DNA of 64,000 nucleotides. It comes from Podarcis filfolensis. Taxonomy: Eukaryota. Of this stretch, positions 1,620-59,074 are shown one piece after another (the first letter of the stretch is position 1; every line of letters begins with the position of its first letter). The notes beneath the pieces are model-generated. The model did no database searches. It saw only the letters and a list, made by a program, of their open reading frames with translations, and was not told where the DNA came from. The position numbers and the translations under genes were made by a program. The stretch is from assembly GCA_964270895.1 (NCBI GenBank), contig OZ185441.1; one strand, given 5' to 3'.

Positions 1620-1643
1620 GACACACGGTGTCACTCTTGCCTA
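1620..1643 (+). promoter_or_regulatory. CSE/CTCF-type promoter element of V1
   Basis: GACACACGGTGTCACTCTTGCCTA, 245 bp upstream of the ATG. Aligns with the elements before V3, V4, V6 and V7. Confidence 0.6.
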
Positions 1644-1864
1644 CAAAATCTCTTCAGGAAACCTAAGGGGATTTGCTGCCCTGCCCTCAGATGGAAAGCA
1701 AATCATTTGATGCAAGAATCCGGAGGAAAACCCCAGATACCATCAAAATATAACAGACAAAGCAGATCCCACCTTTTCAAGCGGAATTTTCATTAACCAA
1801 AGGATGAATTCATAGCATCAGGAAACCTCACATTCTGGCCATCATTCTAAGAAACCACAGCTCA

Positions 1865-4222
1865 ATGGAGACGGAGAGAAGGCAGCTGCTGCAGCTGATG
1901 GTGCTTCATGCAGCCTGGATGGTGGGGAGCGGCCAGCTCCATTATTCTGTGCCGGAGGAATCCCAGCATGGCACCTTTGTGGGCCGCATCGCCCAGGACC
2001 TGGGGCTGGAGGTGGAGGAGCTGGTGCCTCGGATGTTCCGGATGGTTTCCAAAGGACAGGAGGACTATTTTGAGGTAAATGTACAGAATGGTGTTTTGTT
2101 TGTGAATTCCCGAATTGACAGGGAGCAGCTGTGTGCTCAGAGTCCCATTTGCATCATTCATCTAGAGATGATTGTGGACAAGCCTCTCAGGATCTTCCAT
2201 GCAGAGGTGGAGATCAGGGACATAAATGACAATGCCCCCATTTTCCCAGTAAATGAACACCAACTATTTATTTTGGAATCTAGGCTGCTGGGCTCCTATT
2301 TTCCACTAGAGGGAGCTTCAGATGCTGATATTGGTTCAAATGGTCTGCTTACCTACATCCTTAGTCCAAATGATCATTTTCAGCTACGTGAAGAAAAGCA
2401 TGGAGATCTCAGTAAATCTTTAGCACTCGTGCTATACAATGCCCTGGATCGAGAAAAAATCTCTGTACATCATTTATTGCTTACTGCCACTGATGGGGGA
2501 CAACCAGAGCTAACTGGTTCAGTGCAGCTGAAGATAACTGTACTAGATGTAAATGATAATGTACCAATGTTTAACCAGTCTGTGTATGAGGTGCATCTGC
2601 TGGAAAACATCACAGAGGGAACATCAGTCATTACTTTGACTGCTTATGACTTGGATGAAGGAACAAATAAAGAAATACTGTATTCGTTTAGCAATATGAT
2701 GCCTCCCCATTTAAGGCAGGTTTTTTCCATAGATTCCAACACAGGTGAAATCAAAACCAAAGGAAAGATAGACTTTGAAGATATTAACTTATTTGAATTG
2801 CAAGTGGAAGCTGCTGATCAAGGGTCCTACTCTTTGGTCGGACACTGCAAAGTTCTGATCCAGGTTTTGGATGTGAATGACAATGCTCCAGAACTGTCTG
2901 TGACATCCATGTCTGTGCCAGTGCCTGAGGACTCCCCACTGGGGACAGTGGTGGCCCTGATGAGTATATCGGACAGTGATGCAGGCATCAATGCTCAAGT
3001 TAGTTGCTCCCTGTGGCCACATGGACTTCCCTTCAGGCTGATATCCACCTTTAAGAATTACTACTCACTGGTGCTGGCTGAATCCCTGGACCGTGAAGAG
3101 GTGGCTGAATACAGGCTGGTGGTGACAGCCCAAGACCAAGGGACTCCATCATTGTCAGCTAGCAGCAGCCTTGTGGTGCCCATCGGTGATGTGAATGACA
3201 ATGCACCTGCTTTTCCTCAGCCCTCCTATACTGTCTTTGTGAAGGAGAACAACCCACCAGGTGCTCACATCTTCACGGTGTCTGCCTCAGACTCAGATGT
3301 GGCTGAAAACGCCTTGGTTAGCTACTGGCTGGATGACAAGCTCTGGCCCCTGTCGAGTTACATCTCAGTGCACTCAGAAAGTGGGAAGCTCTATGCTTTA
3401 CAGCCCTTGGACTATGAGGAGGTGAAGCTGCTGGAGTTCCAAGTGAGGGCCAAGGATGCTGGGCTGCCCTCCCTGTGTGGCAATGTGACAGTGCAAGTCT
3501 TTGTGGTGGATGAGAATGATAATGCACCTGAAGTTTCCAAGGCAGCAGAGGCCCCCATCCTGCTGGTAGTTCCTGTTACTGCAGGACACATGGTGGGCAA
3601 GATCCATGCCCTGGATGCTGACTCAGGCTACAATGCCTGGTTGCACTATGAGCTGCATGAAGGAAGTAGTAGCTCCTGGCGTGTGGGGCTGTACAGTGGT
3701 GAGATTAGTACTACACATGCGCTGGATGAGACAGAGGGGGTAGGCAGTAGCATGATTCTCTTGGTGCTGGTGAAGGACCATGGGAAGCCTGTACGGTCAA
3801 CCACAGCTACGTTGAGCATTTCCCTGGTGGCAAGCACCCAGGCTGCTCAAGCTGATGCCCACCTCTCCAGAATGGGAGGGAGCCTCAAGCCTCTGGTGGA
3901 CACTACAAACATTTACCTGATCATTGCCATCTGCTCAGTGTCCAGCTTGTTCCTGCTTGCCATCGTTGTGTATGTGGCTCTGCGATGCCAGTCTCAGCTC
4001 GAGGACAGTTCCAGGTATGGTCCTGGCACAGCCACACTAGTGTGCGCCAGTGAAGTGGGTAGCTGGTCATATTCACAACGTCATAGTCGCAACCTGGGAT
4101 GTGTGGCTGGGGAAGCTGGTATCAAGAATGACCTCATGGTTTTCAGTCCCAATATTCCTGTCTTTGCTGTGAACACAGGAGTAGGAAATGCAAAGGAGCT
4201 TGTTCCAAATTTATCTGGAGAG
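1865..4222 (+). CDS. PCDHA: Protocadherin-alpha variable exon V1 (signal peptide, EC1-EC6, TM, variable cytoplasmic tail); needs downstream constant exons
   Basis: 786 codons. Alpha signatures [61 protein letters not shown] and VGSWSYS; DxNDN linkers. Phase-0 donor GAG|GTGAGT at 4222/4223. Isoform number cannot be assigned. Confidence 0.95.
2303..2316 (+). promoter_or_regulatory. Exonic CTCF-like site (eCBS equivalent) in V1 EC2 codons PLEGA
   Basis: CCACTAGAGGGAGC matches the CTCF core CCASYAGRKGG(C/A)GC, in forward orientation. Confidence 0.65.
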
Positions 4223-4826
4223 GTGAGTCACATTGAAGCCTTAAGAATCTTTGTAACTGATGCTCTTGTATTCCTTTCTTGTTTCAATGCATGGCATTAT
4301 ACTATAGGACACCATATAAAGAGACAATGGGGCTTGATTGCTCTGTGCACTTCTATATATTTATCTGTTCTCTTTCTTAATCGAATTTCTTGCCTATCCT
4401 TCCACCCAGGCTCAAGACAGGTACAATTTTGCTTACAATAAAAAATGTATAAAATGTATAAAAAAGTATAAAATTCATTTCATACTTACAATATTTGTAA
4501 GAATATTACAGCGCAGTAGGAGGTGTGGGGAATTCACTCTTCCCTTACTTTGAGAAGTGAAGGGATCTGTCTAGTTGACGTCCTTTGCTGTTTGAATCTT
4601 TCCCTGAGGAGAAGGTATTTTGGATATGTAGGCTTAAATCTCTTTAATTGTGATGTAGCTTTGCAGGAAAGGGTGTAGGAAGCTTGGCTAGATGCCTGTG
4701 TCCTATGATGTACCCTAGTCTCGAGGAAGCTCTGACATGCATGTGTTTCAACGCATTGGTTCCTTTCAAATCGCTATCACTGTGGAAATCCCTGACTTTT
4801 CTGTGAACTCTGGTCAAGTTTTCAAT

Positions 4827-5172
4827 GGTGGCACTGTGGGTTAAACCACAGAGCCTAGGACTTGCCGATCAGAAGGTCGGCGGTTCAGATCCCCATGACG
4901 GGGTGAGCTCCCGTTGCTCGGTCCTGCTCCTGCCAACCTAGCAGTTCGAAAGCACGTCAAAGTGCAAGTAGATAAATAGGTAGTGCTCCAGCGGGAAGGT
5001 AAATGGCATTTCCGTGCGCTGCTCTGGTTCACCAGAAGTGGCTTAGTCATGCTGGCCACATGACCCGGAAGCTGTACTCCGGCTCCCTCGGCCAATAAAG
5101 CGAGATGAGTGCTGCAACCCCAGAGTCGGCCATGACTGGACCTAATGGTCAGGGGTCCCTTTACCTTTACCT
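4827..5172 (+). mobile_element. Sauria SINE (Squam1-type), near full length
   Basis: tRNA-like head GGTGGCACTGTGGGTTAAACCACAGAGCCTAGG, mutated B box GGTTCAGATCC (4882-4892) and an (ACCTTT)n tail. Reverse-complement match to the copy at 31484-31831. Confidence 0.9.
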
Positions 5173-6840: not shown

Positions 6841-6864
6841 GTCACAAGATGTCGCTATCCACTG
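6841..6864 (+). promoter_or_regulatory. CSE/CTCF promoter element of V2 (canonical CGCT core)
   Basis: GTCACAAGATGTCGCTATCCACTG, 205 bp upstream of the ATG. Has the CGCT core of clustered-Pcdh CSEs and is nearly identical to the V8 element. Confidence 0.85.
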
Positions 6865-7045
6865 AAAATCAAAACGCTCTTTTGATACAAAGATCAAAGC
6901 CCCTCCCAGCAATTCAGAAAGAACAGAGACCATTAGAGGACAGTATGGATGCAACAGCATAACAACTGACTGATTCCCAGCCTTTAATGCCATCACGAAA
7001 GAGTGGATTTAATTTTTAAAACCAGGAATAAGACCTACCATTGCT

Positions 7046-9415
7046 ATGGTTGTTTTGCTCCGATGCTGCTTGGTGAGAAGGCAGCTGCTGCAGCTGTTTT
7101 TCATCTGCATGGCTTGGGAGAGAGGGAGCGGCCAGCTCCATTATTCAGTGTCTGAAGAATCCCAGCATGGCACCTTTGTGGGCCGCATTGCCCAGGATCT
7201 GGGGCTGGAGGTGGAGGAGCTGGTGCCTCGGATGTTCCGGATGGAGTCTCAAAGCCAAGGGGACTATTTAGAGGTAAATGTTCAGAATGGGATTTTGTTT
7301 GTTAACTCTCGAATAGACAGGGAGGAGCTGTGTGGCAAAAGCCCTTTGTGTGCCATTCACCTGGAGGTGATTGTGGATAAGCCTCTGAGGGTCTTTCATA
7401 TTGAGGTGGAGATCAAGGACATAAATGATAATGCTCCTACATTTCCTCAAATAGAACAAGATGTCTTTATTTCAGAAATGAGAATGCCTGGATCATTTTT
7501 CCCTCTGGTGGGAGCTTCTGATGCAGATATTGGTCCAAATTCTCACCTCACCTATACACTCAGCCCCAGCGAATACTTTAGTCTAGATATTCAGAGGAAA
7601 CACGATGAAAGTCCATCACTAGCACTCCTTTTAAAAACCTCTCTAGACAGAGAGGTGAGAGCTAAGCATCGTTTGCTGCTCACAGCCATTGATGGGGGGA
7701 AGCCAGAGCTCAGTGGCACAGCACAGCTGGTGATTTCTGTTCTTGATGAAAATGACAATGCACCTGCCTTTAATCAGTCAGTTTATAAAGTCCAAATGGC
7801 AGAGGATGTTCTAAGTGGGACATTAGTGGTCAAATTGAATGCCACAGATATGGATGAGGGAATCAATAAGGAGATTACATACTCATTTCAGAATCATGTG
7901 CCTGTTAAATTAAAAAATATATTTGTCTTAGATTCTGTTAATGGGGAAATAAGAACAAAAGAAAAATTAGACTTTGAGCAAAATCACCAGTATGAGATTC
8001 AGGTACAAGCTAGCGACAAAGGGAGCAATCCAATGACAGGATATTGCAGTGTTGTAGTGGAAGTGCTAGATGTCAATGACAATGCCCCTGAGATGTCATT
8101 AAAATCTCTCCTGGTGCCAGTGCCAGAGGATTCCCTGCCTGGAATGGTGGTGGCCCTGATCAGTGTCTCAGATCAGGATTCTGGGGCCAATGGACAAATA
8201 AGCTGCTTCCTGCACCCTCCAGAACTTCCCTTCAAGTTGGTGTCCACCTTCAAGAATTACTACTCTCTGGTAGTGTCTGAGCCTCTGGATCGGGAGCAGG
8301 TGGCTGAATACAAGCTGCTTGTAACAGCTCAAGATCAAGGGACTCCATCGCTGTCAGCCACCAGCAGCCTGGTGGTGCCCATTGGTGATGTGAATGACAA
8401 TGCACCCGCTTTTGCACAGCCATCTTACACAGTCTTTGTGAAGGAGAACAACCCACCTGGTGCTCACATCTTCACTGTGTCTGCCTCAGATCCAGATGTG
8501 GCTGAGAATGCGCTGGTCAGCTACTGGATCGATGAGAAGCTCTGGCCCCTGACAAGCTACATCTCGGTGCACTCAGAGAGTGGGAAGGTCTATGCATTGC
8601 AGCCCTTGGACTATGAGGAGCTGAAGCTGCTGGAGTTCCAAGTGAGGGCCAAGGATGCTGGGCTGCCCTCCTTGTGTGGCAATGTGACTATTCAGGTTTT
8701 TGTGGTCGATGAGAATGACAACGCACCTGCAGTGTCTGGAATGGCAGAAGAAAACCCAGTTCTGCTAGTGATCCCTGTGATGGCTGGGCATATAGTGGGG
8801 AAAATACAAGCCCTGGATGCTGACTCAGGCTACAATGCATGGCTACGGTATGAAATGCATGAGGGGACAAGTGGTCCATGGCGAGTTGGGCAGTACAGTG
8901 GAGAGATTAGCACTACACGTGCCCTTGATGAGGGAGAAGTTAGCGGTAGCAGCCAGAATCTGCTGGTCTTGGTGAAGGACCATGGGAATCCAATGTTGTC
9001 AGCTACTGCTACATTAAGTGTGACACTGGTGGCAAGCACCCAGCTCACCCGTACTGATGTTCACCTTCCAAGAACAGGAGGGAACCCAAAGCCTCTTGCA
9101 GGCAGTGCCAACATCTACCTAATCATTGCCATCTGCTCAGTGTCCAGCTTGTTTCTGCTTGCAATCATAATATACATTGTCCTGCGATGCCAGTCCCAAG
9201 CAAAGGAGGCTATGATATATGGCCCTGGCACAGCCACCCTCGTATGTGCCAGTGAAGTGGGTAGCTGGTCATATTCAAATCGTCATAGCCATATCCTGGC
9301 GGGTGTGAGTGGTGAAGCTGGCATCAAAAGTGACCTCATGGTTTTCAGCCCCAACATTCCTCCTCTGCAAGGCAGTGAGAAACAGGAACACATACTTGGT
9401 GATTCATCAGCGCAG
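7046..9415 (+). CDS. PCDHA: Protocadherin-alpha variable exon V2
   Basis: 790 codons, same alpha signatures, six EC repeats and TM. Phase-0 donor CAG|GTGAGT at 9415/9416. Confidence 0.95.
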
Positions 9416-14667: not shown

Positions 14668-14691
14668 GTCACACGGGGTCGCAATTGCCTA
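14668..14691 (+). promoter_or_regulatory. CSE/CTCF-type promoter element of V3
   Basis: GTCACACGGGGTCGCAATTGCCTA, 225 bp upstream of the ATG. Core is CGCA. Confidence 0.7.
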
Positions 14692-26157: not shown

Positions 26158-26181
26158 TTCGCTAGAGGTCACTGTTGCCTA
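26158..26181 (+). promoter_or_regulatory. CSE/CTCF-type promoter element of V4
   Basis: TTCGCTAGAGGTCACTGTTGCCTA, 288 bp upstream of the first ATG. Flanks align with the V6 and V7 promoters. Confidence 0.75.
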
Positions 26182-34142: not shown

Positions 34143-34166
34143 AACACAAGGGGGAGCCATTGACTA
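34143..34166 (+). promoter_or_regulatory. CSE/CTCF-type promoter element of V5
   Basis: AACACAAGGGGGAGCCATTGACTA, 213 bp upstream of the ATG. CTCF-like core ACACAAGGGGGAGC at the CSE position. Confidence 0.65.
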
Positions 34167-34355: not shown

Positions 34356-36731
34356 ATGCCTTTTCTGCAAAGAGATTTCCAGGTGACAATGAAGCTGCTG
34401 CAGCTGATTGTGTTCCACAAAGCCTGGTTGATGGGGAGCGGCCAGCTCCATTATTCTGTGCCTGAGGAATCCCAGCATGGCACCTTTGTGGGCCGCATCA
34501 CTCAGGATCTGGGGCTGGAGGTGGGAGAGCTCATGCCTCGGATGTTCCGGATGGTTTCCAAAGACCACAAGGATTATTTAGAGGTAAATGTGCAAAATGG
34601 GATCTTGTTTGTTAGTTCCCGGATAGACAGGGAGGAGCTTTGCAGCAAGAATCCTGTGTGCACCATTCACTTGGAGGTGATCCTGGATAAGCCCCTTCGG
34701 GTTTTTCATGTGGAAGTGGAGATCAGGGATATAAATGACAATGCTCCTGTTTTCTCGGAGGGCGAGGAGATTTTGAGTGTCGCAGAGTCAACACTGCCAG
34801 GTGCTCATTTCCCTCTAGAGGGAGCCTCAGATGCAGATGTTGGTGCTAATGCTCAACTGAAGTACAAGCTCAACTCCACAGAATATTTTGTTGTTGAAGA
34901 GAAAATCAACGACAGGCACAGTAAATCATTAGTGCTTGTGTTAAAGAAACCTGTGGACAGAGAAAAAATCCCTGTGCATCGTTTAGTGCTAACAGCTACT
35001 GATGGGGGTCAACCAGAACTCACAAGCACCGTTCATCTTGAGATCACTGTGATTGATGCAAATGACAATGCACCTGTATTTAATCAATCTGTTTATAAGG
35101 TGAAATTGTTAGAAAATGTGGCAGATGGAACATTGGTTATTCATCTCAATGCAACAGACTTAGATGAAGGAAGTAACAAGGAAATCACCTACTATTTCAG
35201 TAAGCATGTTTCTCCCAATGTAAAAAAGACATTCAGTATAGATTCAGTTACAGGTGAGATTAGGGTAAAAGGAAAAGTGGATTACGAAGATATCAATCTG
35301 TATGATATTGAAATTGAGGCGAAAGACAAAGGAACCCCTCCTCTCTCAGGGCACTGCAATGTCATCATAGAAATAATGGACGTAAATGACAACATCCCGG
35401 AAGTATCAGTGACATCGCTATCAGTACCTGTCTCAGAGGACTCCCCACTGGAGTCAGTGGTGGCCCTAATCAGTGCCTCAGACAAGGACGCTGGCACCAA
35501 TGGACAAGTAAACTGCTCTCTGTGGCCTCCTGGGCTCCCCTTTAAGCTGGTATCCACTTTCAAGAATTACTACTCCCTGGTGCTAAATGAACCTCTGGAT
35601 CGAGAAAAGGTTGCAGAATACAAACTAGTTGTAACAGCAAGAGACCAAGGGGACCCACCCTTGTCAGCCAGCAGCACCCTGGTTGTGCCCATCGGTGATG
35701 TGAACGACAATGCACCTGCTTTTACTCAGACTTCCTACACAGTTTTTGTGAAAGAGAACAACCCACCTGGTGCCCACATCTTTACGGTGTCTGCCTCAGA
35801 TCCAGATATAGCTGAGAATGCTCTGGTCACCTACTGGATAGATGAGAACCTCTGGCCACTGTCAAGCTACATCTCGGTACACTCAGAAAGTGGGAATGTC
35901 TATGCTTTGCAGCCCTTGGATTATGAGGAACTGAAGCTGCTGGAGTTCAAAGTGAGTGCAAAGGACGCCGGATTGCCCTCCTTGCACAGCAATGTGATGG
36001 TGCAGGTCTTTGTGGTGGATGAAAATGATAACGCCCCAACAGTATCTGGGCCAGAGCACACTCCCATCTTGCTGGTGATCCCTTTGGTTGCTGGACAGAT
36101 GGTAGGCAAGATCCGTGCTCTGGATGCTGACTCAGGCTACAATGCATGGCTTCACTATGAGCTGCATGAGTCAACTAGCGGTCCTTGGCGGGTGGGCCTA
36201 TATAGTGGGGAGATCAGCACCACCCGTGTTTTGAATGAGATGGAGGGTGATGCTGGCAGCCAGAATCTGCTGGTACTGGTGAAGGATCATGGCAAGCCAA
36301 TGCTGTCAACCACAGCCACCCTGAGTGTGTCACTGGTGGTCAGTGCTCAGGCCATCCACACAGATGGCTACCATTCTAGAGCAGGAGGGAGCTCAAAGCC
36401 GCTTGAAGAGAACAAAAATGTCTACCTGATCATTGCCATCTGCTCAGTTTCCACATTGTTTCTGCTGGCAATCATTGTGTATATGGCTCTGCGATGCCAG
36501 TGTCAACCCAAGGAGCCCGTGATGTATGGCCCTGGCACAGCCACATTGGTTTGTGCCAGCGAAGTGGGCAGCTGGTCCTATTCAAATCGCCACAGCCATA
36601 TCCTGGCAGCTCCAGCTGGGGAGGCTGGTGCCAAGAATGACCTCATGGTTTTTACCCCCAACATCCCTGCCTTTATGGAGAATGGAGAGCTTGGGAATGG
36701 GAAGGAAATGGCTCCAACCTCATCTGGACAG
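34356..36731 (+). CDS. PCDHA: Protocadherin-alpha variable exon V5
   Basis: 792 codons from the first ATG (34356; the track start 34302 is TTG). Phase-0 donor CAG|GTAAGT at 36731/36732. Confidence 0.93.
34812..34825 (+). promoter_or_regulatory. Exonic CTCF-like site in V5 EC2
   Basis: CCTCTAGAGGGAGC, one mismatch to the V1/V8 version. Confidence 0.5.
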
Positions 36732-42324: not shown

Positions 42325-42541
42325 CAGTGGTACTCGGGTTAATAACTTAATTCGTTCTGGAGGTCTGTTCTTAAACTGAAACTGTTCTTAACCTGAGGTA
42401 CCACTTTAGCTAATGGGGCCTCCTGCTGCCATCGCCGCACGATTTCTGTTCTCATCCTGAAGCAAAGTTCTTAACCCGAGGTACTATTTCTGGGTTAGTG
42501 GAGTCTGTAACCTAAAGCGTCTGTAACCCAAGGTACCACTG
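42325..42541 (-). mobile_element. Tc1/mariner-pogo MITE, copy C
   Basis: TA-CAGTGGTACTCGGGTTAA...TAACCCAAGGTACCACTG-TA. Same orientation as copy B. Confidence 0.9.
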
Positions 42542-42984: not shown

Positions 42985-43226
42985 CAGTGGTACCTCGGGT
43001 TACAGACACTTCAGGTTACAGACACTTCAGGTTACAGACTCCGCTAACCCAGAAATAGTACCTCGGGTTAAGAACTTTGCTTCAGGATGAGAACAGAAAT
43101 TGTGCGGCGGCAGCACAGCAGCAGCAGGAGGCCCCATTAGCTAAAGTGGTACCTCAGGTTAAGAACAGTTTCAGGTTAAGAACGGACTTCCAGAACGAAA
43201 TCAGTTCTTAACCTGAGGTACCACTG
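42985..43226 (+). mobile_element. Tc1/mariner-pogo MITE, copy D
   Basis: TA-CAGTGGTACCTCGGGTTAC...TAACCTGAGGTACCACTG-TA. Same orientation as copy A; ends 194 bp before the V6 CSE. Confidence 0.9.
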
Positions 43227-43420: not shown

Positions 43421-43444
43421 GTCACAAGGGGTCACTGTTGCCTA
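43421..43444 (+). promoter_or_regulatory. CSE/CTCF-type promoter element of V6
   Basis: GTCACAAGGGGTCACTGTTGCCTA, 223 bp upstream of the first ATG. CACT instead of CGCT. Confidence 0.75.
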
Positions 43445-43643
43445 AGGAAATGTTTTAAGAACAGAGAGAATTCATAGCTCCTCCCTTAGAGAGCCTGAAA
43501 ATCCTGCCTGTGAGATTCACAATAGGGATATCACACACCAGATGCAAGATTACTGGAATCTATTCAAATGATTACACCAACCCTGATGAGCTCTTTGGAC
43601 CCTGCTCTTCACTTCTTCAAGAAAGGTGATTTTTAAAGGAGAA

Positions 43644-46046
43644 ATGCCACTGGTGGGATTTGTGTCTGTATTTGCAATGGTTCCTTGGCAGAATCCTTCC
43701 GTGGTAAAGCAGCTGCTGCAGCTGGTTCTTCTCCACACAGCCTGGGAGATGGGGAGCGGCCAGCTCCATTATTCTGTGCCGGAGGAATCCCAGCATGGCA
43801 CCTTTGTGGGTCGCATCACTCAGGATCTTGGGCTGGATGTAAGTGAGCTGGTGCCTCGGATGTTCCAGATGGTGTCTAGAGGACATGAAGACTATTTTGA
43901 GGTAAATGTGCAAAATGGAATTTTGTTTGTGAATTCCCGGATAGACAGGGAGGAGCTTTGCAACAAGAACCCTCTGTGCTCCATTCACCTGGAGATGATT
44001 GTGGATAAACCTCTGAGGGTCTTCCATGTGGAAGTGGAGATCAAGGACATAAATGACAATGCTCCTCTTTTTTCAGTAAATGAACAGAATTTGACTATTG
44101 CAGAATCAGGTTTACCAGGTTTCCGTTTCCTGTTAGCTGGTGCCTCTGATGCAGATACAGATGCCAATGCTTTGCTGACCTACAAGCTCAGCCCTAATGA
44201 CTATTTCATGCTTGAATCGGGAGGTGATGAGGACCAGAGTAAATCTCCAGTACTTATACTAAAAACCCCACTTGACAGAGAGAAGACTCCTGTGCATCAC
44301 TTGGTACTCACAGCCACTGATGGGGGCAAACCAAAGCTCACAGGCACAGTCCAGCTGGTGATCAATGTCCTGGATGCAAATGACAACCCTCCTGTATTTA
44401 ACCAATCAGTTTACAAGGTAAAACTATTGGAGAATGCAGCTAATGGAACAACAGTTATTAAACTGAATGCTACAGACTTAGATGAAGGGAATAATGGGGA
44501 AATCACTTATTTTTTTAGTAATAATGTACCACCCCGTTTCACAAAGATATTTAGCATAAGTGCCAACACAGGTGAGGTCAGAGTGATTGGGAAAGTAGAT
44601 TTTGAAGACATTAATCTATATGACCTTCAAATTGTTGCAGAAGATAAAGGCAGTTTGCCCTTGTCTGGACACTGTAAGGTTCTCATTGAGGTGTTAGACA
44701 TGAACGACAACGTTCCAGAAGTTTCTGTGACTTCTCTTGCTGTGCCAGTGCCAGAGGACTCTCCTCCAGGGACAGTGGTGGCCCTCGTCAGCGTCTCGGA
44801 CAGGGACTCTGAAGCCAATGGGCAAGTGAGTTGCTCCCTGTGGCCCCCTGGGCTGCCTTTCAAATTAGCATCGACATTCAAGAACTACTACTCCTTAACT
44901 CTAGCAGAGCCTTTGGATCGGGAGCGGGTGGCTGAGTACAGCTTGGTAGTGACAGCTCAAGATCAAGGCGTCCCACCATTGTCTGCTAGCAGCAGCCTCT
45001 TAGTTCCTATCCGTGATGTAAATGACAATGCTCCAGCTTTCACGCAGCCCTCCTACACGGTCTTTGTGAAGGAGAATAATCCACCGGGAGCCCACATCTT
45101 CACTGTGTCTGCCTCAGACCCGGATGTGGCTGAGAATGCTCTAGTCAGCTACTGGATCGATGAGACACTCTGGCCCCTGACAAGCTACATCTCAGTGCAC
45201 TCAGAGAGTGGGAAGGTCTATGCCTTGCAACCCTTGGACTATGAGGACATAAAGCTTCTGGAGTTCCAAGTGAGGGCCAAGGATGCCGGGCTGCCCTCCT
45301 TGTGTGGCAACACTACAGTTCAGGTGTTTGTGGTGGATGAGAATGACAATGCGCCTACAGTGGCTGGGTCATCAGAAGAGACTCCAATTGTTCTAGTGGC
45401 TCCTGTGTTGTCTGGACACATGGTGGGCAAGATCCGTGCCCTGGATGCTGACTCAGGGTACAATGCATGGTTGCGATATGAGATGCATGAGTTGACCGCT
45501 GGCCCTTGGCGTGTGGGGCTGTACAGTGGGGAGATCAGTACCACACGTGCCCTGGATGAGGTGGAGAGCAGAAGCAGCCAGACTCTCCTTGTGTTGGTGA
45601 AAGATCATGGCACACCTTCACTCACGGCCACAGCCACCCTGAGTGTGTCACTGGTGGCAAGTGCCCAGGCTGTTAAGACTGACACCCTTTCCAGGACAGG
45701 TGAAAGCTCAAAGCCTTTGGTGGACAATGTCAATGTCTACTTGATCATTGCCATCTGCTCCGTGTCCAGCTTGTTCCTCCTAGCAGTAATCTTTTACGTG
45801 GCCTTGCGATGCCGTTGCCAGGCGAAGGAGGCCATGGTGTATGGTCCTGGCACAGCCACACTGGTATGTGCCAGTGAAGTGGGCAGCTGGTCATATTCAA
45901 ATCGCCACAGCCACATCCTGGCAGGTGTGAGCGGGGAGGCTGGAGCCAAGAGCGACCTCATGGTCTTCAGCCCCAACATTCCTGTTTTTGCAGATAATGG
46001 GGAGGTTAGGAATGGGAAGGAACTGCTCCCAAATGCATCTGGAGAG
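43644..46046 (+). CDS. PCDHA: Protocadherin-alpha variable exon V6
   Basis: 801 codons from the first ATG (43644; ATG 43677 is an alternative start; the track start 43626 is GTG). Phase-0 donor GAG|GTGAGT at 46046/46047. Confidence 0.93.
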
Positions 46047-47082: not shown

Positions 47083-47091
47083 TTTTCTTTC
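47021..47091. repeat. (TTTC)15 microsatellite plus pyrimidine extension
   Basis: Pure TTTC at 47021-47080, then TTTTTTCTTTC, then TATTTACAG. Confidence 0.95.
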
Positions 47092-51052: not shown

Positions 51053-51076
51053 GTCACAAGGTGTCACTGTTGTTTA
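51053..51076 (+). promoter_or_regulatory. CSE/CTCF-type promoter element of V7
   Basis: GTCACAAGGTGTCACTGTTGTTTA, 233 bp upstream of the ATG. CACT core. Confidence 0.75.
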
Positions 51077-51285
51077 AGGAGTTTTTTAGGAAGACTGAAA
51101 ATTCAGAGCTCCTCCCTCAAAGGTGCTGAATATCCTGTCAAATACACAGCAGAGACATCAAACATTAGCTGCAATACCAGAGTCAACTGATCTCTTAGCC
51201 ACTGGTTTGGAGGAACGTCTTGGACTCTGCTCATCACTTCCTCAAAAAAGGCAAGACATTGCTGGGATTTGTATCTGAATTTGTC

Positions 51286-53655
51286 ATGCTTGCATGGAAG
51301 ACAAATTCTGGAAAGAGATGTCTACTGCAGCTGGTTCTTCTCCACACAGCCTGGTTAATGGGGAGCGGCCAGCTCCATTATTCTGTGCCAGAGGAATCCC
51401 AGCATGGCACCTTTGTGGGCCGCATCGCCCAGGACCTGGGGCTGGAGGTGGGAGAGCTGGTGCCTCGGCTGTTTCGAATGGTGTCCAAAGGACAGGAGGA
51501 GTATTTTGAGGTAAATGTTCAGAATGGGATTTTATTTGTGAATTCCCGGATAGACAGGGAGGAGTTGTGTGACAGGAGCGCTGTGTGTGTTATTCACCTG
51601 GAGGCCCTTGTAGATAAACCCCTGAAGGTTTTCCACGTGGAAGTGGAGATCACCGACATAAATGACAATGCCCCCATTTTCCCTGTAACAGAAAAGCAAT
51701 TTACTATTGCAGAGTCTAGCTCTCGTGATTCACGTTTTCCTCTAGAGGGAGCCTCTGATGCAGACATCAGTGCAAACTCGCTCCTTAGCTACAGACTTAG
51801 CACAAATCCACATTTCAGTCTAGAGACAATAGAAAATCATGAACGTGGTGCATCTTTATTTCTTGTTTTAAACAAACCTCTTGATAGAGAAGAATGTGCA
51901 GCTCACCATCTTTTACTCACAGCAGTTGATGGAGGCCAGCCCCAGCTCACTGGCACCGTCCAGCTGATAATCAAAGTGCTGGACGCAAATGACAATCCTC
52001 CTGTATTTAACCAGTCAGTTTATAAAGTCCATTTATTAGAAAACTCAGAGAATGGGCTATTAGTAATTAAGCTAAATGCTACCGATTTAGATGAGGGAAC
52101 AAATAAGGAGATCACATATACATCAAGCACTTTTTCTCCTGCAAATGGAAAAGAAAAGTTTGTACTTGATCAAAAGACTGGTGAGATTCACGTGAAAGGA
52201 AATCTGGATTTTGAAGACAAGAATTTTTATGAAATACAAGTTGAGGCTAAAGACATGGGGAATCCCCCGTTATCAGGGCATTGCAAAGTTTTGATTGAGG
52301 TTCTAGATGTAAATGATAATGCACCTGAAATTTCAGTGATGTCTCTGCTGGTACCCGTTCCAGAGGACTCCCCTCTGGGGATGGTGGTGGCCCTGATAAG
52401 CATATCAGACAGGGATATTGATGCCAATGGACAAGTGAGCACTTCCTTATGGCCACATGGAACCCCCTTCAAGCTACTTTCCACCTTCAAGAATTACCAT
52501 TCACTGTTGCTAGCTGAGCCCCTGGATAGAGAACAAGAGGCTGAGTATAGGCTGGTAGTGACTGCCCAGGATCAAGGGACTCCATCACTGTCAGCCAGCA
52601 GCACCTTGGTGGTGCCCATCAGTGATGTGAATGACAATGCACCTGCTTTTGCTCAGCCCTCCTACACGGTCTTTGTGAAGGAGAACAACCCACCGGGTGC
52701 TCACATCTTCACAGTGTCTGCTTCAGACCCAGATGTGGCTGAGAACAGCCTGATCAGCTACTGGCTGGACGAAAAGCTCTGGCCCCTGACAAGCTACATC
52801 TCGGTGCATTCAGAGAGTGGGAAGCTCTATGCTCTTCAGCCCTTGGACTATGAGGAGGTGAAGCTGCTGGAGTTCCAAGTGAGGGCCAAGGATGCTGGGC
52901 TGCCCTCCCTGTGTGGCAATGTGACGGTGCAAGTCTTTGTGGTGGATGAGAATGATAACACGCCTGTAGTGTATGGGACAGAAGTGATTCCCATCTCTTT
53001 GACTGTTCCTGTGACTGCTGGACAGGTGGTGGGCAAGATCCATGCCATGGATGCTGACTCTGGCTACAATGCATGGCTGCGCTATGAGATGCACGAGGCA
53101 ATCAGCAGCCCTTGGCGTGTGGGATTATACAGCGGGGAGATCAGCGCCGCACGTTCCCTGGATGACGCAGAGGGCAGCTACAGCCAAAGGCTTCTCGTTC
53201 TAGTGAAGGACCATGGCAAGCCAGCTTTGTCATCCACAGCTACTTTGAGTGTGTCCATGGTGATGAATTCCCAGGCTGTCCATGGCGACGCTCACCTTTC
53301 AAGGAAGGGAGGTAGTCCAAAGCCACTGGGGGAAAATGCCAATGTTTACTTGATCATTGCTATCTGCTCGGTGTCCAGCTTATTCCTGCTGGCGATCATA
53401 GTATACATGGCACTGCGATGCCATTGCCAGGCCAAGGAGGCCGTGGTGTACGGTCCTGGGACAGCCACACTAGTCTGCGCCAGCGAAGTTGGCAGCTGGT
53501 CATATTCAAATCGTCACAGCCATCTTCTGGCGGGCATGAGTGGGGAGGCTGGTGCCAAGAGTGACCTCATGGTCTTCAGCCCCAGCATTCCGGCCTGTGT
53601 GGAAAATGGGCAAGTGGGAGTTGTGAAGGAACCAGTTCCAAATTCATCTGAGCAG
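51286..53655 (+). CDS. PCDHA: Protocadherin-alpha variable exon V7
   Basis: 790 codons from the first ATG (51286; the track start 51220 is TTG). Phase-0 donor CAG|GTGAGT at 53655/53656. Confidence 0.93.
51739..51752 (+). promoter_or_regulatory. Exonic CTCF-like site in V7 EC2
   Basis: CCTCTAGAGGGAGC in codons PLEGA. Confidence 0.5.
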
Positions 53656-54134
53656 GTGAGTTATAAGAATTGATACTATGATCAATGAAAAAACTACTAT
53701 GAAAAACCTATTCCGTTTTGGCATGTGTGACATGGTTGGGTATTTGATTTTTTAATAATTAAAAGCATTACTTTGATTCACACTTATGATTTTTGGTAGA
53801 CTTTAATGAGAATGTTGCAGGGGTAAAGGTAGTGTTATTCTTATTTTATAGGCAAATGCCATTGGCCTCATTCCACTTATACCTGTGAAGATGATCTTTT
53901 GGATGTAAAAACAGCCAGTGTTTTTGCTGTTGTTGGGAGCAAGAATATGCGCCAGCATACCCCTGAAACATGCTTCTCTTTCTGTTCAGAGTATTTGGAC
54001 AACCAGTGCTTGACTGTGTTTAATATTGGTTATTTGGTTTTTGAATTAAAATAAGGAACAGTGTAGCAAATTAGTTGTGGCCAAGTATCGAGCATTAACG
54101 AAACCTCAAACCATTCCTCAAACCTACACAGGAA

Positions 54135-54545
54135 GTTAGTTAGTTTAGTTTATTACGGCCATAGGCCCATATTCAATACATCATACAGCAAAACAGGTAT
54201 AACAAGATAAAATTAATAAATTAAAATACGTTAAAATCAGGTACATCTCAAACCGTAAGTTTCTAAATTCCATTAAAATAAGAATATAGCACTTAAAATA
54301 TCAAATTATCAATATATATCAATATTATTTGAGCAAAATCAATAATCATAAATCCATTTTTCCTCTTATAAGCTAATACTGTTATCAGAAATCTGGCAAC
54401 AGAGAGGGACCTACTCGGATCAGAATCTTGCAATAAATATATTAGCTGTGTTTCCAAGGAGTCACCTGGGATTTCCGATAATAAAGGGGACAAGAATCTG
54501 ATCCGAGAAACTGAATGTAGTGAACAACAGAATAGTATATGTTGT
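54135..54545 (-). mobile_element. 5'-truncated LINE 3' end with 13-bp TSD (RTEX/Rex-Babar/L2-like, clade uncertain)
   Basis: TSD ACCTACACAGGAA at 54122-54134 and 54546-54558. The minus-strand frame QHILFCCSLHSVSRIRFLSPLL...IYLL...VARFL resembles a LINE ORF2 C-terminus. (AACT)n-like tail. Confidence 0.75.
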
Positions 54546-55829
54546 ACCTACACAGGAATGAAGGACAAGTTTAGATGATCCACCTTCAGAAAGAGGAGGC
54601 TCTGAATGGTTTCTATTCCATTTTTGGTGACTTTCCTCATGACATGGCAAGTGGTTCTGTCAAATCCCTGGTCAGTTTGTGCCATCTCCCACTACCTAAA
54701 GTCCATTTAGGTCCTTCATTTTTCTGGAGTTCATTTTGGACCTTACTCTGTGGTAGATATAGTAACAAAGAAATTATTTCCCCACCACCATGCACATCTG
54801 TGTCCAGCACATCTGTTTATGTGGTGAGAGAGCTGCTTCATGTGGGTTTTCAGACAGATCTTATGACGCCTCAGCAACCTCTGGCGATATTTTTGCTAAG
54901 CACCTCAAGGATAAAATTGCTCATGTTTGTACTGATATGGCTGTGGCGCTGAGTTTAGTAAATTACCCGTTGTTCTATGGTCTTGCCGATATTGTGTAGA
55001 TGTGTTCCATTTATTATAGTCTAAGGATGCTGAAAGGTTGCTTGGAGTTTTAATTTAGTCATTTAGTGTATATTTATATTGACCACCCATTAGCACAGTT
55101 TTTGGGGTGGCTCACAAAGGTAAAGTGATAAAATGCACACAAACATGCATGCAACAGCAACAAAAATAGTGTGACTCGACAATTTTTGCTCTTTCTCACT
55201 TATAATATTTTCTCATCAAGATATGATGGGTACACTCCAGGAAATCGTGAATGTGTCACTGAAAGAGGTAGCCTGGGAGTAGCCACTGGGTATATCCTTT
55301 GGGTTTCTACACAATGTGCTTCAGATGTTGGTGAGGTAGAAAAAAAGCCCTCTCTTGAAGATCTTAAAATGTATGCAGGCTAATATGGAAGAATATAATG
55401 TTTCAGATAACCAGGTCCACCTCCAACATCTGAGCATTCAGATCTGAATCCTAGAGTGTAACCAAACTGCAAAGCTGAGTCTTCAAGCAAAGTAGAACCA
55501 CATCCAAGGCAGGTTGAGCCCCATTTCTCCAGCTTGCCTTTCTATTGGCCAGGAGCTTCTCTGGCTGAATCTACAGTTTGTGCACCATCTTCCAGTCCAT
55601 TACTAACATCAGACACTAATTCTGAAGGCAGTTTCCTTGGATTTAAATGGAAAAAAAGAAATAGAGTTGGGTGGCATCAGCATATTGGTGATAATGAACC
55701 CCCAAACTCCTGGACACCTGACCCAGCAGTTTCATGAAATGTGAGGAAACAATGTGGAATTTTGACAGACACACTATAGGCCATTGGCCAAAGCCTTAAA
55801 CAGGAGTCCTCCAGCACCATGTTCTGAAA

Positions 55830-55945
55830 CTTTCCCTCTAAGAAGAAACAGATCTACTGTAAAACAATGCCTTCCAGTCTCATCACAGCCAGGCAGTCCT
55901 GAAGGATACCATGGTCAATAGTGCCTAAGCTGCAAAGGGATCCAG
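55830..55945 (-). mobile_element. L2 RT fragment
   Basis: Translation GTIDHGILQDCLAVMRLEGIVLQ resembles the RT motif DTIDHGILL.RL...GL.G.VLQW. Confidence 0.45.
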
Positions 55946-57595
55946 CAGAACCAACAGGATGGATTTTCTTATTTGATTGCAGAAATAATTTTGAATATAG
56001 TTTTTCAAACACAGACACAGAACTGGACCATTTAAGGAAACACCAGAGACTACATGCCAAATTCACTTACCTGGGAATAACTCCAATCAAACTACATAGG
56101 GATTACTTCTGGGTAGCCATGTAAAGGACTGCACTGTTAGAGGGCCATAATCTCTCTCTAGTTTATACTCCTGTCTATATATTTTTGTGAATATACCCTT
56201 GCTGAATAAAATCTTCCAGTTTCCTTAAGCCACCTTTAACCAACTTCCTTGCCACTGATAATAAAGTAAACGTAAAAGTATACATGAATTTATATTTGGT
56301 GTACGTGAAGTAAAAAAGGAATCACTTTGGAATATACCTAATTAAAATACAGTCACAACCACATTTAAAAGAAAAAGCTCAATATAAATGCATGATAGAA
56401 ACCAGGAAGAAAGTATACGGTAACTTACAATAACTTACAAATATATGACAACTTACAATTTAATAAACAGCACCTAGCACTGTTGTTATATCCCACCTTT
56501 TTCCCTGACAGGGACTCAGGGTGACTGACGAGTGTTAGAAGGCAAATCCATTTACAGTTGTGTCTTCTTCATTTTCTATTACAGCATCACACCAAAACTA
56601 AAAGAGCCTCATAAAATAAAAAGAGAATGCCTATAGTTCTTGGCTAAAATTTTATCTTGCATTAAAACTGTTCTTCTTGGCTAAATTAACATTCCTTGCA
56701 GTGTAATCCTAAACATGTTTGTTCGATAGCAATAACAGAAAGTTCCACCATGTTGGATGGGGCGTACTCCCAGGAAATGTGCATAGGACTATAGCCTTAA
56801 TTGATTCCTCTACCAATGACAACATCTGTGCCCATTCTCACCAGTTAAATCAGTGAGATCTGGGCTGGATGTCTGAGCCTCTGAGGTGGCAGATAAGAGG
56901 GGTGTGCATGACCTCCATGATACACCAAGTATGTATCTTGGCATTTTTGAAAATTCTGATCTGTTTTTGAGTCGTGCTCTGTTCTCTCTGATTCAGTCTG
57001 TAATTTGGGTTGGAGCTGCTCTGTATAAAACAAGCCTCTCTGTTCCGCCTTCACTATAACAGAAAATCTGAAAATGGCTACAACTTTCCTTTTTTTGGCC
57101 AAGGTGGATGAAATTTACAGGCGCAGGAGCCCCCCACCCCACCCCCAATGGATCAAGCCTGTCAAATTGCAGAATACTTCCAGGGGCTTTTTGTGGTGGA
57201 AGTAAAAGGGATTCAGTTTCCTCCATAATCCCATTGACGTGTGTGTGTGTGTGCAGGTGTTTGCCTCTTGCTCTTTCTTACCTTAAAATAATTAATAGGT
57301 GACTGACTGCTGTGTATTCTTGCATGCGTTTTTTAAAAACCTTGCAGCTTTACACATGCTTTTCCAATTCTTGTTTGTGTTCTCTGATAGGCCTTATAAT
57401 GTGAGGCTGTCTCCAACAGGGCCCTCAGTGTTCTGAAGAACTCTGGAGATTTCTTTGCTAAAACCAAACAACATTGGGATTCCCCCCCCCCCCGCCCAAA
57501 CATAACTTTTTTTAAAAAAAAACCCCACTGCTGTGCTGTAACAAAAGAAAAAGGAAATTCCTGAGCTCTTTATTGATCTGTAGGCAACAATTTCA

Positions 57596-57742
57596 GACCC
57601 TCCAAGTGTCCCTATGTTGCAGGGACAGTCCAGGATTTACAACAGCCATCTCGGTTTCTGATTTGATCCCAGAATTGATCCTGGAATGTCCTGCTTTTCC
57701 TTAGAGTGCCCTTATTTTCATTGGAGAAATGTTGGTGGGTAT
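57596..57742. mobile_element. Short lizard repeat, MITE-like
   Basis: Ends GACCCTCCAAG... / ...GTTGGTGGGTAT resemble a common lacertid short repeat. From recall only. Confidence 0.35.
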
Positions 57743-59050
57743 AAACTTTTCTGGGACAAATGGCATATAAATATTTTAAAATAGTAATAAATAAAAAAAT
57801 AAGAGAGGTCAGCAGCAAGGCAGTCACGTGTATGTGCTGCATTAGTAGCTTGCAAGTAAAAGCAGATATTGCTACTTTCTAATGAAACATGGTATATATT
57901 ACCATTTTTAATATTTTTATATTAAAATACAGACAATTATTTTATTGTTTATTTTAATTCAAAACACAACCGAGGCCTAGAGCCTCTATCAACTATCAGC
58001 CATCTTCTCAATAATGCAAACATCAACTGGGGTAGTTCTTCTTGCCCTTCTGCTTGGGGACAGTACAATTATTAACGAATTACTTCCCTAGTACTTTTGT
58101 ATTCTTTTAACCACTGTAATGCATAAGTGCAGGAGGATGCAAAGAATGACTCAATAATATCCTTAAAAACTATTATCCTGTTGAATCTAGGATAGTGGGA
58201 TTTGTATTTCTTTTTTATGATTATTTTTTTAAAGGGAAGGAACACTAATTTTCAAGTCAGTCAATGTGGTGTGGTGGTTAGAAAGTTAAGGGCACTGGGA
58301 ATTGTAGCTTGGGGGTGGAAACTACAGTTTTTAGAATTCTTTGAGGGAAGTCACATGCTTTAAATGTATGTTGTGTACGTAGCCTTTGTCTAGCAATTTC
58401 TGTATTATTGTTTTGGCTCTCAATGACCTTACCTGGCAAGATGGAATAGGCTGGGTTGCAAATAAATTATGGGCTGTGTCCCTAGTTTGAGGTTCTAAAA
58501 TAATTTTAGTTGGATCCAGTAGGGTTTTTCCAATGTTCTCTGGCTAATTTTTTAATGTGTCAGTTCTCTGCCTGTCACACACTGTGCCTTTGCTGTGTAG
58601 AGTGATTGGGCAAAGAGAGAAGGCCGCTGGACACGGTGGTCCCAGAAGTAATGCCTAGTTGATCTCTTGTGAAGGAATGCAGTTGACTCAGTATCTCAGA
58701 CCTCTACAGTGTAAACTTCTCAACAGTTTGGTATGCCTTGTGATAACAGCATAAAAGTCTTCTAGTGTAAGTAGTTGAAAATGTAACCTGTGGAAGCCAC
58801 AATACTCTGACTGAGTTCTATTTTGGATAATTGAAATCAACATGTACTCTACCTAATTGTTTGATTCTACTATGATTATTCAAAAATATTACAACTATAT
58901 ACCAAAAAACACACAAGTTAACTTTGCAAGGAAAAACGTCAGAAAATAATAGCAACGAACTACACATATATTTCAGAAGGAAATTATGAAATTAATCTAA
59001 GAATTGAGGAAAATTTAAAATAAAATACCTGTGTGGCATTTATACCAATT

Positions 59051-59074
59051 GTCACAAGATGTCGCTACCCACTG
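59051..59074 (+). promoter_or_regulatory. CSE/CTCF promoter element of V8 (canonical CGCT core)
   Basis: GTCACAAGATGTCGCTACCCACTG, 211 bp upstream of the ATG. One mismatch to the V2 element. Confidence 0.85.

What the first reader, a model, noticed from the sequence alone, without database searches (positions are those of the whole stretch)
1620..59074. CpG-free CTCF promoter elements: three of eight lizard Pcdh-alpha CSEs cannot be methylated
Seen: aligned 14-nt cores are V1 ACACACGGTGTCAC, V2 TCACAAGATGTCGC, V3 TCACACGGGGTCGC, V4 TCGCTAGAGGTCAC, V5 ACACAAGGGGGAGC, V6 TCACAAGGGGTCAC, V7 TCACAAGGTGTCAC, V8 TCACAAGATGTCGC. Only V2 and V8 keep CGCT; V1, V4, V6 and V7 have CACT. V5, V6 and V7 have no CpG anywhere in the 24-bp element, V4 has its CpG at motif position 2, and V1/V3 have one at position 6. 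Established: in mammals stochastic Pcdh-alpha choice depends on demethylation of the CSE and eCBS, which lets CTCF bind; methylation at motif position 2 is the more inhibitory one. Inference: the array mixes methylation-gated promoters (V4 most clearly) with ones that cannot be gated at the site, so isoform choice here may use a different or mixed logic.
Basis: partly seen in the sequence, partly recalled or inferred. Interest (0 to 1): 0.75.

Follow-up and report, generated by a model that had tools for sequence, protein, structure and literature searches.

The report
Lizard protocadherin promoter CTCF sites lacking CpG
Eight lizard protocadherin-alpha promoters each carry the conserved CTCF-type element known from mammals, but three have no CpG at all, as part of a squamate-wide CpG loss in this gene array, so the mouse model of methylation-gated promoter choice may not carry over unchanged.

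Summary
All eight 14-nt cores sit where stated, on the + strand, 204-287 bp upstream of the start codons of eight tandem Pcdh-alpha variable exons of a lacertid lizard. V5, V6 and V7 have no CpG in the element; V6 and V7 have none within 100 bp.

The CpG-free elements are not decayed sites. They are among the best CTCF-motif matches. Their lineages are CpG-free in the other squamates sampled, and V6 is identical in a gecko and an anguid. The V7 orthologue is transcribed and spliced to the alpha constant exon in related lizards.

The reading needs widening and softening:
- Absence of CpG is what the CpG-poor background predicts. The non-random part is that five cores keep a CpG.
- The loss extends beyond these three elements. 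All eight squamate taxa sampled have CpG-poor promoters and 5' exons and CpG-free exonic CTCF sites. Rodent, turtle and pigeon are CpG-rich there.
- By the position-2 rule, only V4 has a CpG at the methylation-sensitive position.
- "Cannot be methylated" ignores neuronal CAC methylation and regional CpGs.
- CGCT-less alpha CSEs are already published for frog and zebrafish.

Verdict: a new variant of a known element. Its regulatory consequence is untested.

The parts
1620..1643 (+). V1 CSE (24-bp element). CACT type with CpG at motif positions 6-7; weak CTCF match.
   Evidence: (score 7.6). A pigeon promoter has a similar CACACGGTGTCGCT core.
6841..6864 (+). V2 CSE. CGCT type with CpG at 12-13; its downstream flank resembles the rodent alpha CSE.
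   Evidence: (score 13.4).
14668..14691 (+). V3 CSE. CpGs at 6-7 and at 12-13 (CGCA, not CGCT).
   Evidence: (score 7.9). A skink V3-like promoter keeps TCGCAA but lacks the 6-7 CpG.
26158..26181 (+). V4 CSE. The only one with CpG at the methylation-sensitive positions 2-3; CACT at 12-15.
   Evidence: score 9.4. Core identical in Lacerta, Zootoca and P. raffonei. The skink orthologue has CA at 2-3.
34143..34166 (+). V5 CSE. CpG-free (GGGGGAGCC type); the best CTCF match of the eight.
   Evidence: score 16.1. Identical in three other lacertids, and CpG-free in the skink orthologue.
43421..43444 (+). V6 CSE. CpG-free CACT type; no CpG within 225 bp upstream or 277 bp downstream.
   Evidence: score 14.3. 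The 16-mer is identical in gecko, anguid and P. raffonei, with about 56 invariant columns around it.
51053..51076 (+). V7 CSE. CpG-free CACT type; one CpG in the 500 bp before the ATG.
   Evidence: score 13.2. The Elgaria orthologue is also CpG-free.
59051..59074 (+). V8 CSE. CGCT type with CpG at 12-13.
   Evidence: score 13.4. The 16-mer is identical in the Elgaria orthologue.
2300..2318 (+). V1 exonic CTCF-like site (eCBS), codons FPLEGA, 682 bp downstream of the CSE; no CpG.
   Evidence: (score 16.6).
34809..34827 (+). V5 eCBS-like site; no CpG.
   Evidence: (score 12.8).
51736..51754 (+). V7 eCBS-like site; no CpG in the forward core. CpGs lie 4-5 and 12-13 bp upstream of the 19-mer.
   Evidence: (score 13.8).
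59718..59736 (+). V8 eCBS-like site; no CpG.
   Evidence: (score 15.7).
7499..7517 (+). V2 position homologous to the eCBS. Degenerate in forward orientation; a reverse-strand match overlaps at 7496-7514.
44127..44144 (+). V6 position homologous to the eCBS; motif lost.
51286..53655 (+). V7 variable exon coding part, ending at a GTGAGT donor (53656).
   Evidence: RNA contigs of four runs cover 51241-53655, and one continues into alpha constant exon 1.
51108..51116 (+). Second conserved promoter box GCTCCTCCC, about 55 bp downstream of the CSE. Also present in V2, V4, V5, V6 and V8.
   Evidence: function not tested.

Best explanation
These are the promoter CTCF sites (CSE, also called pCBS) of eight alternate protocadherin-alpha variable exons of a lacertid lizard close to Podarcis.

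Shown:
- They lie at the canonical distance from the start codon and in the forward orientation.
- They match the CTCF core about as well as, or better than, two rodent alpha CSEs.
- They are the most conserved block of each promoter.
- In four exons they are paired with a forward exonic CTCF-like site 668-685 bp downstream, as in mammals.
- In squamates the whole alpha array is CpG-depleted: promoters and 5' exons have no CpG islands, and the exonic site has lost its CpGs through synonymous changes.
- Several CSE lineages read CACT or GAGCC where turtle and rodent read CGCT.
- These states are old and stable, and at least V7 is expressed and spliced.

Inferred:
- CTCF binds these sites.
- CpG methylation inside the motif cannot set occupancy at V5, V6 and V7. 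Methylation of a CpG at the sensitive position 2 can set it only at V4.
- Any gating of promoter choice must therefore be indirect (sparse exon CpGs, chromatin state, or non-CpG methylation), or choice rests on CTCF/cohesin competition for the enhancer alone.
For: Location and identity:
- Position, strand and identity of the elements and exons.
- CTCF-matrix scores are V5 16.1, V6 14.3, V2/V8 13.4, V7 13.2, V4 9.4, V3 7.9 and V1 7.6. Two rodent alpha CSEs score 7.3 and 9.5.
- The window has 12 strong hits against 1.8 expected.
- Forward exonic sites are present in V1, V5, V7 and V8.

CpG depletion:
- No promoter meets CpG-island criteria. Promoter o/e is 0.06-0.38 and 5' exon o/e is 0.24-0.39.
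- Across eight squamate taxa, promoters are 0-0.48 and 5' exons 0.16-0.56. Rodent is 0.37-0.85 and 0.55-0.71, turtle 0.58-0.88 and 0.65-0.78, and pigeon above 1.
- The exonic site reads GGGCGCGT or GGGCGCAT in rodent and turtle, and GGCGCGT or GGCGCCT in pigeon. In squamates it reads GGGAGCTT or GGGAGCCT.
- Only 27-37% of noncoding window CpGs are kept in Lacerta and Zootoca at about 91% identity, mostly becoming TG or CA. This indicates germline methylation.

Age of the states:
- The V5, V7 and V8 clades each have 100/100 support and a uniform CSE type. The V6 core is identical in gecko and anguid, within a 99/99 V4/V6 superclade.

Expression:
- RNA contigs from three studies of one relative and one study of another cover only the V7 exon. 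One contig joins 53655 to a sequence encoding PKPPNPDWRY, the start of the alpha constant region.

Literature:
- CpA or CpG is accepted at positions 2-3 and 12-13. Position-2 methylation inhibits CTCF binding and position-12 methylation does not (PMC11514455).
Against: - No CTCF-binding or methylation data for any lizard could be examined.
- T at position 11 departs from the genome-wide CTCF consensus, although both rodent alpha CSEs share it.
- Cold-blooded vertebrates can have unmethylated islands that sequence criteria miss.
- Exon CpGs (8-13 in the first 600 bp) could still carry a regional methylation signal.
- Expression is shown for V7 only, and in a close relative rather than the window's own species.
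- The Wu laboratory reports that methylation of the CGCT box blocks CTCF. If so, V2, V3 and V8 would be gated too.
Confidence: 0.7

Rival explanations
1. Regional gating as in mouse. DNA methylation still controls choice, but it acts through the sparse CpGs of the 5' exon and flanks (methyl-binding proteins, nucleosomes, heterochromatin), not through a CpG inside the CTCF motif. On this reading the CpG-free cores change nothing.
For: Every exon keeps 8-13 CpGs in its first 600 bp, starting 162-278 bp downstream of the V6 and V7 cores. In mouse, transcription correlated with methylation of the first exon, while CSE methylation was mosaic regardless of activity. One EMSA study saw no effect of SSE-CSE methylation (PMC3333863).
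Against: CpG density there is at background level (o/e 0.24-0.39 against 0.20 intergenic). There is no island for a demethylation switch to act on. V6 also lacks the exonic CTCF site, whose demethylation is part of the mammalian model.
Confidence: 0.3
2. Non-CpG gating. In neurons, DNMT3A methylates the cytosine at motif position 2 in its CAC context, and this blocks CTCF just as 5mCpG at position 2 does. On this reading the CpG-free elements remain methylation-gated.
For: Seven of eight cores have CAC at positions 2-4, and V1, V4, V6 and V7 also have it at 12-14. CAC is the preferred neuronal mCH context and mCH is also found in zebrafish brain (PMC7978034). CTCF needs an unmodified C at position 2, whether followed by G or A (PMC11514455).
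Against: mCH accumulates late, in post-mitotic neurons, and at low per-site levels, whereas Pcdh choice is set early in mammals. mCH is not maintained by the CpG maintenance system. No lizard brain mCH data were examined.
Confidence: 0.1
3. The CpG-free elements are not CTCF sites. They are bound by another factor, or they are relics, and those promoters use other elements.
For: All but V5 have T instead of G at motif position 11. A second conserved box (GCTCCTCCC) lies about 55 bp downstream. No binding data exist.
Against: Both rodent alpha CSEs, whose family binds CTCF in mammals, share T11 and score lower. The core and its flanks are invariant from gecko to lacertid. V7 is expressed. Orientation and CSE-to-exonic-site spacing match the mammalian pair.
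Confidence: 0.1

Closest known systems
Mammalian Pcdh-alpha CSE / pCBS with its exonic partner eCBS
   Same: Position about 200 bp upstream of the ATG, forward CTCF orientation, and the shared core G-A/G-T/G-G-T-C at motif positions 7-12. A forward exonic site lies about 0.7 kb downstream at the FPLEGA codons. Each variable exon has its own copy.
   Different: The two rodent cores sampled carry CpGs at both 2-3 and 12-13 (CCGC...GTCGCT), and their exons carry CpG-island-like segments at the 5' end. The rodent exonic site contains CpGs. No lizard core here has both CpGs, three have none, no promoter has an island, and the exonic sites are CpG-free (PMC10463633).
Xenopus tropicalis and zebrafish Pcdh-alpha CSEs
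   Same: CSE motif present at the same position but without the CGCT box: all 14 frog alpha promoters, and divergent zebrafish alpha CSEs (PMC4978886).
   Different: Those reports do not discuss methylation, CTCF-motif positions or CpG content. The lizard array is mixed, with CGCT-bearing and CpG-free lineages side by side, each stable for a long time.
Methylation-insensitive CTCF sites with CpA at motif positions 2-3
   Same: CpA at 2-3 and CpA or CpG at 12-13 are both accepted by CTCF. Only position-2 methylation inhibits binding (PMC11514455).
   Different: Here such sites sit at promoters of a stochastically chosen gene array, where the current mammalian model requires a methylation switch at the site.

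Membership tests
Clustered protocadherin-alpha variable exons | Single large exon of about 2.4 kb encoding a signal peptide, six cadherin repeats, a TM segment and a short tail, arranged in tandem and named alpha by homology | tested here: met
   Eight ORFs of 792-858 aa; Cadherin_2 plus five Cadherin hits; best hits are squamate protocadherin alpha proteins.
Clustered protocadherin-alpha variable exons | Spliced from a donor at the exon end to the shared alpha constant exon 1 | tested here: met
   For V7 only. An RNA contig joins 53655 (followed by GTGAGT) to a sequence encoding PKPPNPDWRY. Similar donors are seen in V1, V2, V3, V5 and V6.
Pcdh CSE (promoter CTCF site) | Conserved element about 200 bp upstream of the start codon of each variable exon | tested here: met
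   204-287 bp upstream in 8 of 8; it is the conserved block in the paralogue alignment and in the orthologue alignments.
Pcdh CSE (promoter CTCF site) | CGCT box | tested here: not met
   Present only in V2 and V8. V3 has CGCA, V1/V4/V6/V7 have CACT, and V5 has AGCC. The literature already calls CGCT-less frog and zebrafish elements CSEs, so this marks a variant and does not exclude membership.
Pcdh CSE (promoter CTCF site) | Match to the CTCF core motif in forward orientation | tested here: met
   Scores 7.6-16.1, all on the + strand, equal to or above two rodent CSEs; hits enriched over shuffles. The matrix was recalled from memory.
Pcdh CSE (promoter CTCF site) | Occupied by CTCF/cohesin in neurons | not testable with these tools
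   No ChIP or CUT&RUN data for lizards were available.
Pcdh CSE (promoter CTCF site) | Alpha-specific partner: forward exonic CTCF site about 0.7 kb downstream | tested here: inconclusive
   Good forward matches in V1, V5, V7 and V8, 668-685 bp downstream. Degenerate or lost in V2, V3, V4 and V6.
Methylation-gated CTCF site | CpG at the methylation-sensitive motif position 2-3 | tested here: not met
   Only V4 has it; the other seven have CpA. The rule comes from PMC11514455.
Methylation-gated CTCF site | Differential methylation between active and silent alleles | not testable with these tools
   No methylome was examined. Fast decay of noncoding CpGs indicates germline methylation of the locus only.

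The most novel reading that the evidence does not exclude
Squamates are a natural experiment in which stochastic Pcdh-alpha promoter choice runs without the CpG-methylation switch at the CTCF sites. The CTCF motifs, their orientation and the promoter-exon pairing were kept for roughly 200 million years, while CpG islands and motif CpGs were lost. Choice is then made by CTCF/cohesin competition for the enhancer, or by another mark such as CAC methylation at motif position 2. A few lineages (V4, V8/V2) retain a CpG under selection for a distinct, methylation-sensitive behaviour.
Probability: 0.25. Interest if true: 0.75.

Novelty: new variant of a known kind. Interest (0 to 1): 0.5.

Why it matters
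The current model of protocadherin-alpha choice in mammals needs demethylation of the promoter and exonic CTCF sites before CTCF can bind and lock in one promoter. If lizards keep the CTCF architecture but have lost the CpGs that the switch acts on, there are two possibilities. Methylation may be dispensable for stochastic choice, or another mark may do the job.

Either answer would show which parts of the mechanism are core and which are mammalian additions. The mixed array also offers an internal control: CpG-free V5, V6 and V7, position-2 CpG in V4, and position-12 CpG in V2 and V8. All can be compared in one animal with one set of brain methylome, CTCF and single-cell isoform data.

Tried and rejected
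- **CpG-free as a statistical oddity.** I asked whether a CpG-free element is unusual here. It is not: the background predicts about 81% of 24-mers without CpG. I dropped that framing.
- **Recent duplication.** I asked whether the similarity of the V4, V6 and V7 elements reflects recent duplication. The protein tree and orthologue alignments show separate old lineages.
- **Earlier analysis of lizard CSEs.** The anole cluster paper does not mention CSE, CGCT or CpG. The NRSE paper covers lizard only for NRSEs.
- **Scan notes.** The only nearby note concerns an unrelated 7SK retrocopy, and a word search found nothing.
- **RNA support for V6.** This could not be checked directly, because the single read-laying run went to V7. 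The share of words in RNA-like runs fits coverage of both exons but does not prove it.
- **Turtle and pigeon loci.** Some ORFs there are broken or tandemly duplicated. In the GC-rich pigeon locus the best matrix hit is not a reliable CSE call. I used those loci mainly for CpG content and the exonic site.
- **Human sequence.** No human sequence was fetched or compared. The runs of N in L007 and L010 were left as they are.
Full report
**What is in the window**

The window holds eight tandem ORFs of 792-858 aa on the + strand. Four were scanned, and each has an N-terminal Cadherin_2 domain and five Cadherin repeats. The best database hits are squamate proteins named protocadherin alpha. The top hit is 94% identical to a Podarcis muralis entry.

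Syntenic DNA of Podarcis raffonei is 97-98% identical over the longest blocks. Lacerta agilis and Zootoca vivipara are about 93% identical. The window is therefore part of the Pcdh-alpha variable array of a lacertid close to Podarcis.

**Check of the observation**

All eight quoted cores are found on the + strand, at 1621, 6842, 14669, 26159, 34144, 43422, 51054 and 59052. V2 and V8 share one sequence. The cores lie 204-287 bp upstream of the first ATG.

- The CpG statements are right.
- V5, V6 and V7 have no CpG in the 24-bp element or within 12 bp either side.
- V6 has none from -225 to +277, and V7 none from at least -300 to +161.

**Are these CTCF-type elements?**

The core aligns with the CTCF motif so that the CGCT box falls on motif positions 12-15.

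| Element | Score |
|---|---|
| V5 | 16.1 |
| V6 | 14.3 |
| V2, V8 | 13.4 |
| V7 | 13.2 |
| V4 | 9.4 |
| V3 | 7.9 |
| V1 | 7.6 |

Two alpha CSEs of a rodent (Sigmodon) score 7.3 and 9.5 and share the unusual T at position 11.

The window has 12 hits of 13 or more on both strands, against 1.8 expected from dinucleotide shuffles. Five are CSEs and five lie at the exonic site described next (four forward, plus V2's reverse-strand hit). The CpG-free elements are thus among the best motif matches. The CpGs of V1, V3 and V4 sit at positions that are normally A, and they weaken the match.

**The exonic partner**

A forward CTCF-like site lies at the codons for FPLEGA, 668-685 bp downstream of the CSE, in V1, V5, V7 and V8 (scores 12.8-16.6). 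It is degenerate in V2, V3 and V4 and lost in V6. This matches the published mammalian arrangement: a forward CSE plus an exonic site about 700 bp downstream (PMC7811963).

None of the lizard exonic cores has a CpG.

**Chance**

The window is CpG-poor (o/e 0.215). A 24-mer without CpG is therefore the expected outcome. Five of eight 14-nt cores holding a CpG is not expected (P = 8e-4). The non-random feature is retention of CpG in some cores, not its absence in others.

**A locus-wide and squamate-wide pattern**

No promoter or 5' exon in the window meets CpG-island criteria. I fetched Pcdh-alpha loci from other taxa:
- three other lacertids;
- a gecko, a skink, an anguid, an iguanian and a snake;
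- a rodent, a turtle and a pigeon.

CpG o/e values (window, all others):

| Taxon | Promoter | 5' exon |
|---|---|---|
| Window | 0.06-0.38 | 0.24-0.39 |
| Eight squamate taxa | 0-0.48 | 0.16-0.56 |
| Rodent | 0.37-0.85 | 0.55-0.71 |
| Turtle | 0.58-0.88 | 0.65-0.78 |
| Pigeon | above 1 | above 1 |

The exonic site reads GGGCGCGT or GGGCGCAT in rodent and turtle, and GGCGCGT or GGCGCCT in pigeon. In squamates it reads GGGAGCTT or GGGAGCCT, a synonymous change that removes the CpGs. [quoted passage not shown]

Noncoding CpGs of the window are kept in only 27% (Lacerta) and 37% (Zootoca) of aligned cases at about 91% overall identity. Most have become TG or CA. This is the signature of germline methylation.

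**Age and stability of the CSE types**

A maximum-likelihood tree of the variable-exon proteins gives these clades:
- **V7 clade** (window, P. raffonei, Elgaria; 100/100): all CpG-free.
- **V8 clade** (same taxa; 100/100): an identical CGCT-bearing 16-mer in all three.
- **V5 clade**, including the skink (100/100): all CpG-free.
- **V4/V6 superclade** (99/99): the gecko, the anguid and V6 share one identical CpG-free 16-mer.

About 56 alignment columns around the V6 element are invariant from lacertid to gecko, while the flanks diverge.

The lacertid V4 CpG at positions 2-3 is shared by Lacerta, Zootoca and P. raffonei. Its skink orthologue and all other members of the superclade have CpA there, so the CpG may be derived.

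The three snake and three iguanian promoters sampled all keep CGCT. The mixture of CpG-bearing and CpG-free CSEs in one array is therefore old. Retention of the V8 CpG between lacertid and anguid, in a background where CpGs decay quickly, suggests selection or germline protection. I could not test this formally.

**Expression**

Contigs of four RNA-like runs were laid on 50500-56499. Three studies came from one related organism and one from another.
- The contigs cover 51241-53655 only, not the promoter.
- Apart from a short 54146-54546 segment that belongs to longer unrelated contigs, they do not cover the intron.
- One contig continues from 53655 into a sequence that translates to PKPPNPDWRY, the start of the alpha constant region.
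- Position 53656 begins GTGAGT.

The V7 orthologue is thus transcribed and correctly spliced in a close relative. The refutation criterion "those isoforms are silent" fails for V7. V6 and V5 were not tested.

**How methylation could or could not act**

A structural review from the Cheng laboratory states four things (PMC11514455):
- CTCF accepts CpG or CpA at positions 2-3 and 12-13.
[quoted passage not shown] - C2 must be unmodified whether followed by G or A.

By this rule CACT-type cores remain good sites, and only V4 has a CpG at the sensitive position. The CGCT CpG of V2, V3 and V8 would not gate.

The Wu laboratory states instead that methylation of the CGCT box precludes CTCF binding. 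Another group saw no effect of SSE-CSE methylation in EMSA. The two rodent cores carry both CpGs, so this conflict cannot be settled from sequence.

"Cannot be methylated" is true only for CpG. C2 in seven cores, and C12 in V1, V4, V6 and V7, lie in CAC. CAC is the preferred context of neuronal non-CpG methylation by DNMT3A, which is also seen in zebrafish brain (PMC7978034). Regional effects through the 8-13 CpGs of each 5' exon also remain possible.

**Comparison with what is known**

The elements work like, and by position, orientation, motif and conservation belong with, the Pcdh-alpha CSE. Six of eight lack the CGCT box that named the element. CGCT-less alpha CSEs are already reported for all 14 Xenopus tropicalis alpha promoters and for zebrafish (PMC4978886). 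The anole cluster paper did not analyse promoters.

I found no earlier report of the following:
- CpG-bearing and CpG-free CSE lineages coexist stably in one squamate array.
- CpG is also lost from the exonic site and from the promoter and exon islands across squamates, in contrast to turtle, bird and rodent.
- All of this occurs with the CTCF architecture kept.

**Verdict**

This is a new variant of a known element. The regulatory consequence is a reasonable but untested hypothesis, with specific experiments listed under next steps.

Noticed in passing
window 26213-26221, 34191-34199, 43477-43485, 51108-51116 (GCTCCTCCC); 6899-6907, 59109-59117 (GCCCCTCCC): A second conserved promoter box lies about 55 bp downstream of the CSE in six of eight promoters, followed by TCAGA-like letters. 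It is also invariant in the gecko and anguid V6-type promoters, together with a further block AATCCTGCCTGT. It could be a GC-box-type factor site or the start-site region.
   Followed up: partly
L002 4320-7097 (Podarcis raffonei, between the V3 and V4 orthologues): A 925-aa ORF with copia-type gag, integrase core and retroviral SH3-like domains lies in CpG-rich DNA, and no matching ORF is called at the corresponding place of the window. It looks like a lineage-specific LTR-retrotransposon insertion inside the Pcdh-alpha array.
   Followed up: partly
window 4721-5150, 22601-22800, 31411-31870, 53091-53540: These are the only segments of the window that meet CpG-island criteria. Three are intergenic and one is at the 3' end of the V7 exon; none is at a promoter. 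Their nature (repeats or unmethylated regulatory islands) was not examined.
   Followed up: no
window 54146-54546: In the intron downstream of V7, RNA-like contigs from several runs align here, but they belong to much longer contigs (up to 5.6 kb) that run on into unrelated sequence. This is most likely an expressed repeat copy and not part of the Pcdh transcript.
   Followed up: no
window 22722-22740 (+), 23516-23534 (-), 42414-42432 (-), 43118-43136 (+): Near-identical GCAGCAGCAGGAGGCCC motifs recur in both orientations in intergenic DNA and score as weak CTCF-like hits. They are probably copies of one repeat family.
   Followed up: no
L012 (Columba livia) 1239, 10546, 24425, 35551: The pigeon alpha locus contains at least four nearly identical tandem units with the same upstream GC-rich element and CpG o/e above 1. 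Several units have interrupted ORFs in this assembly.
   Followed up: no
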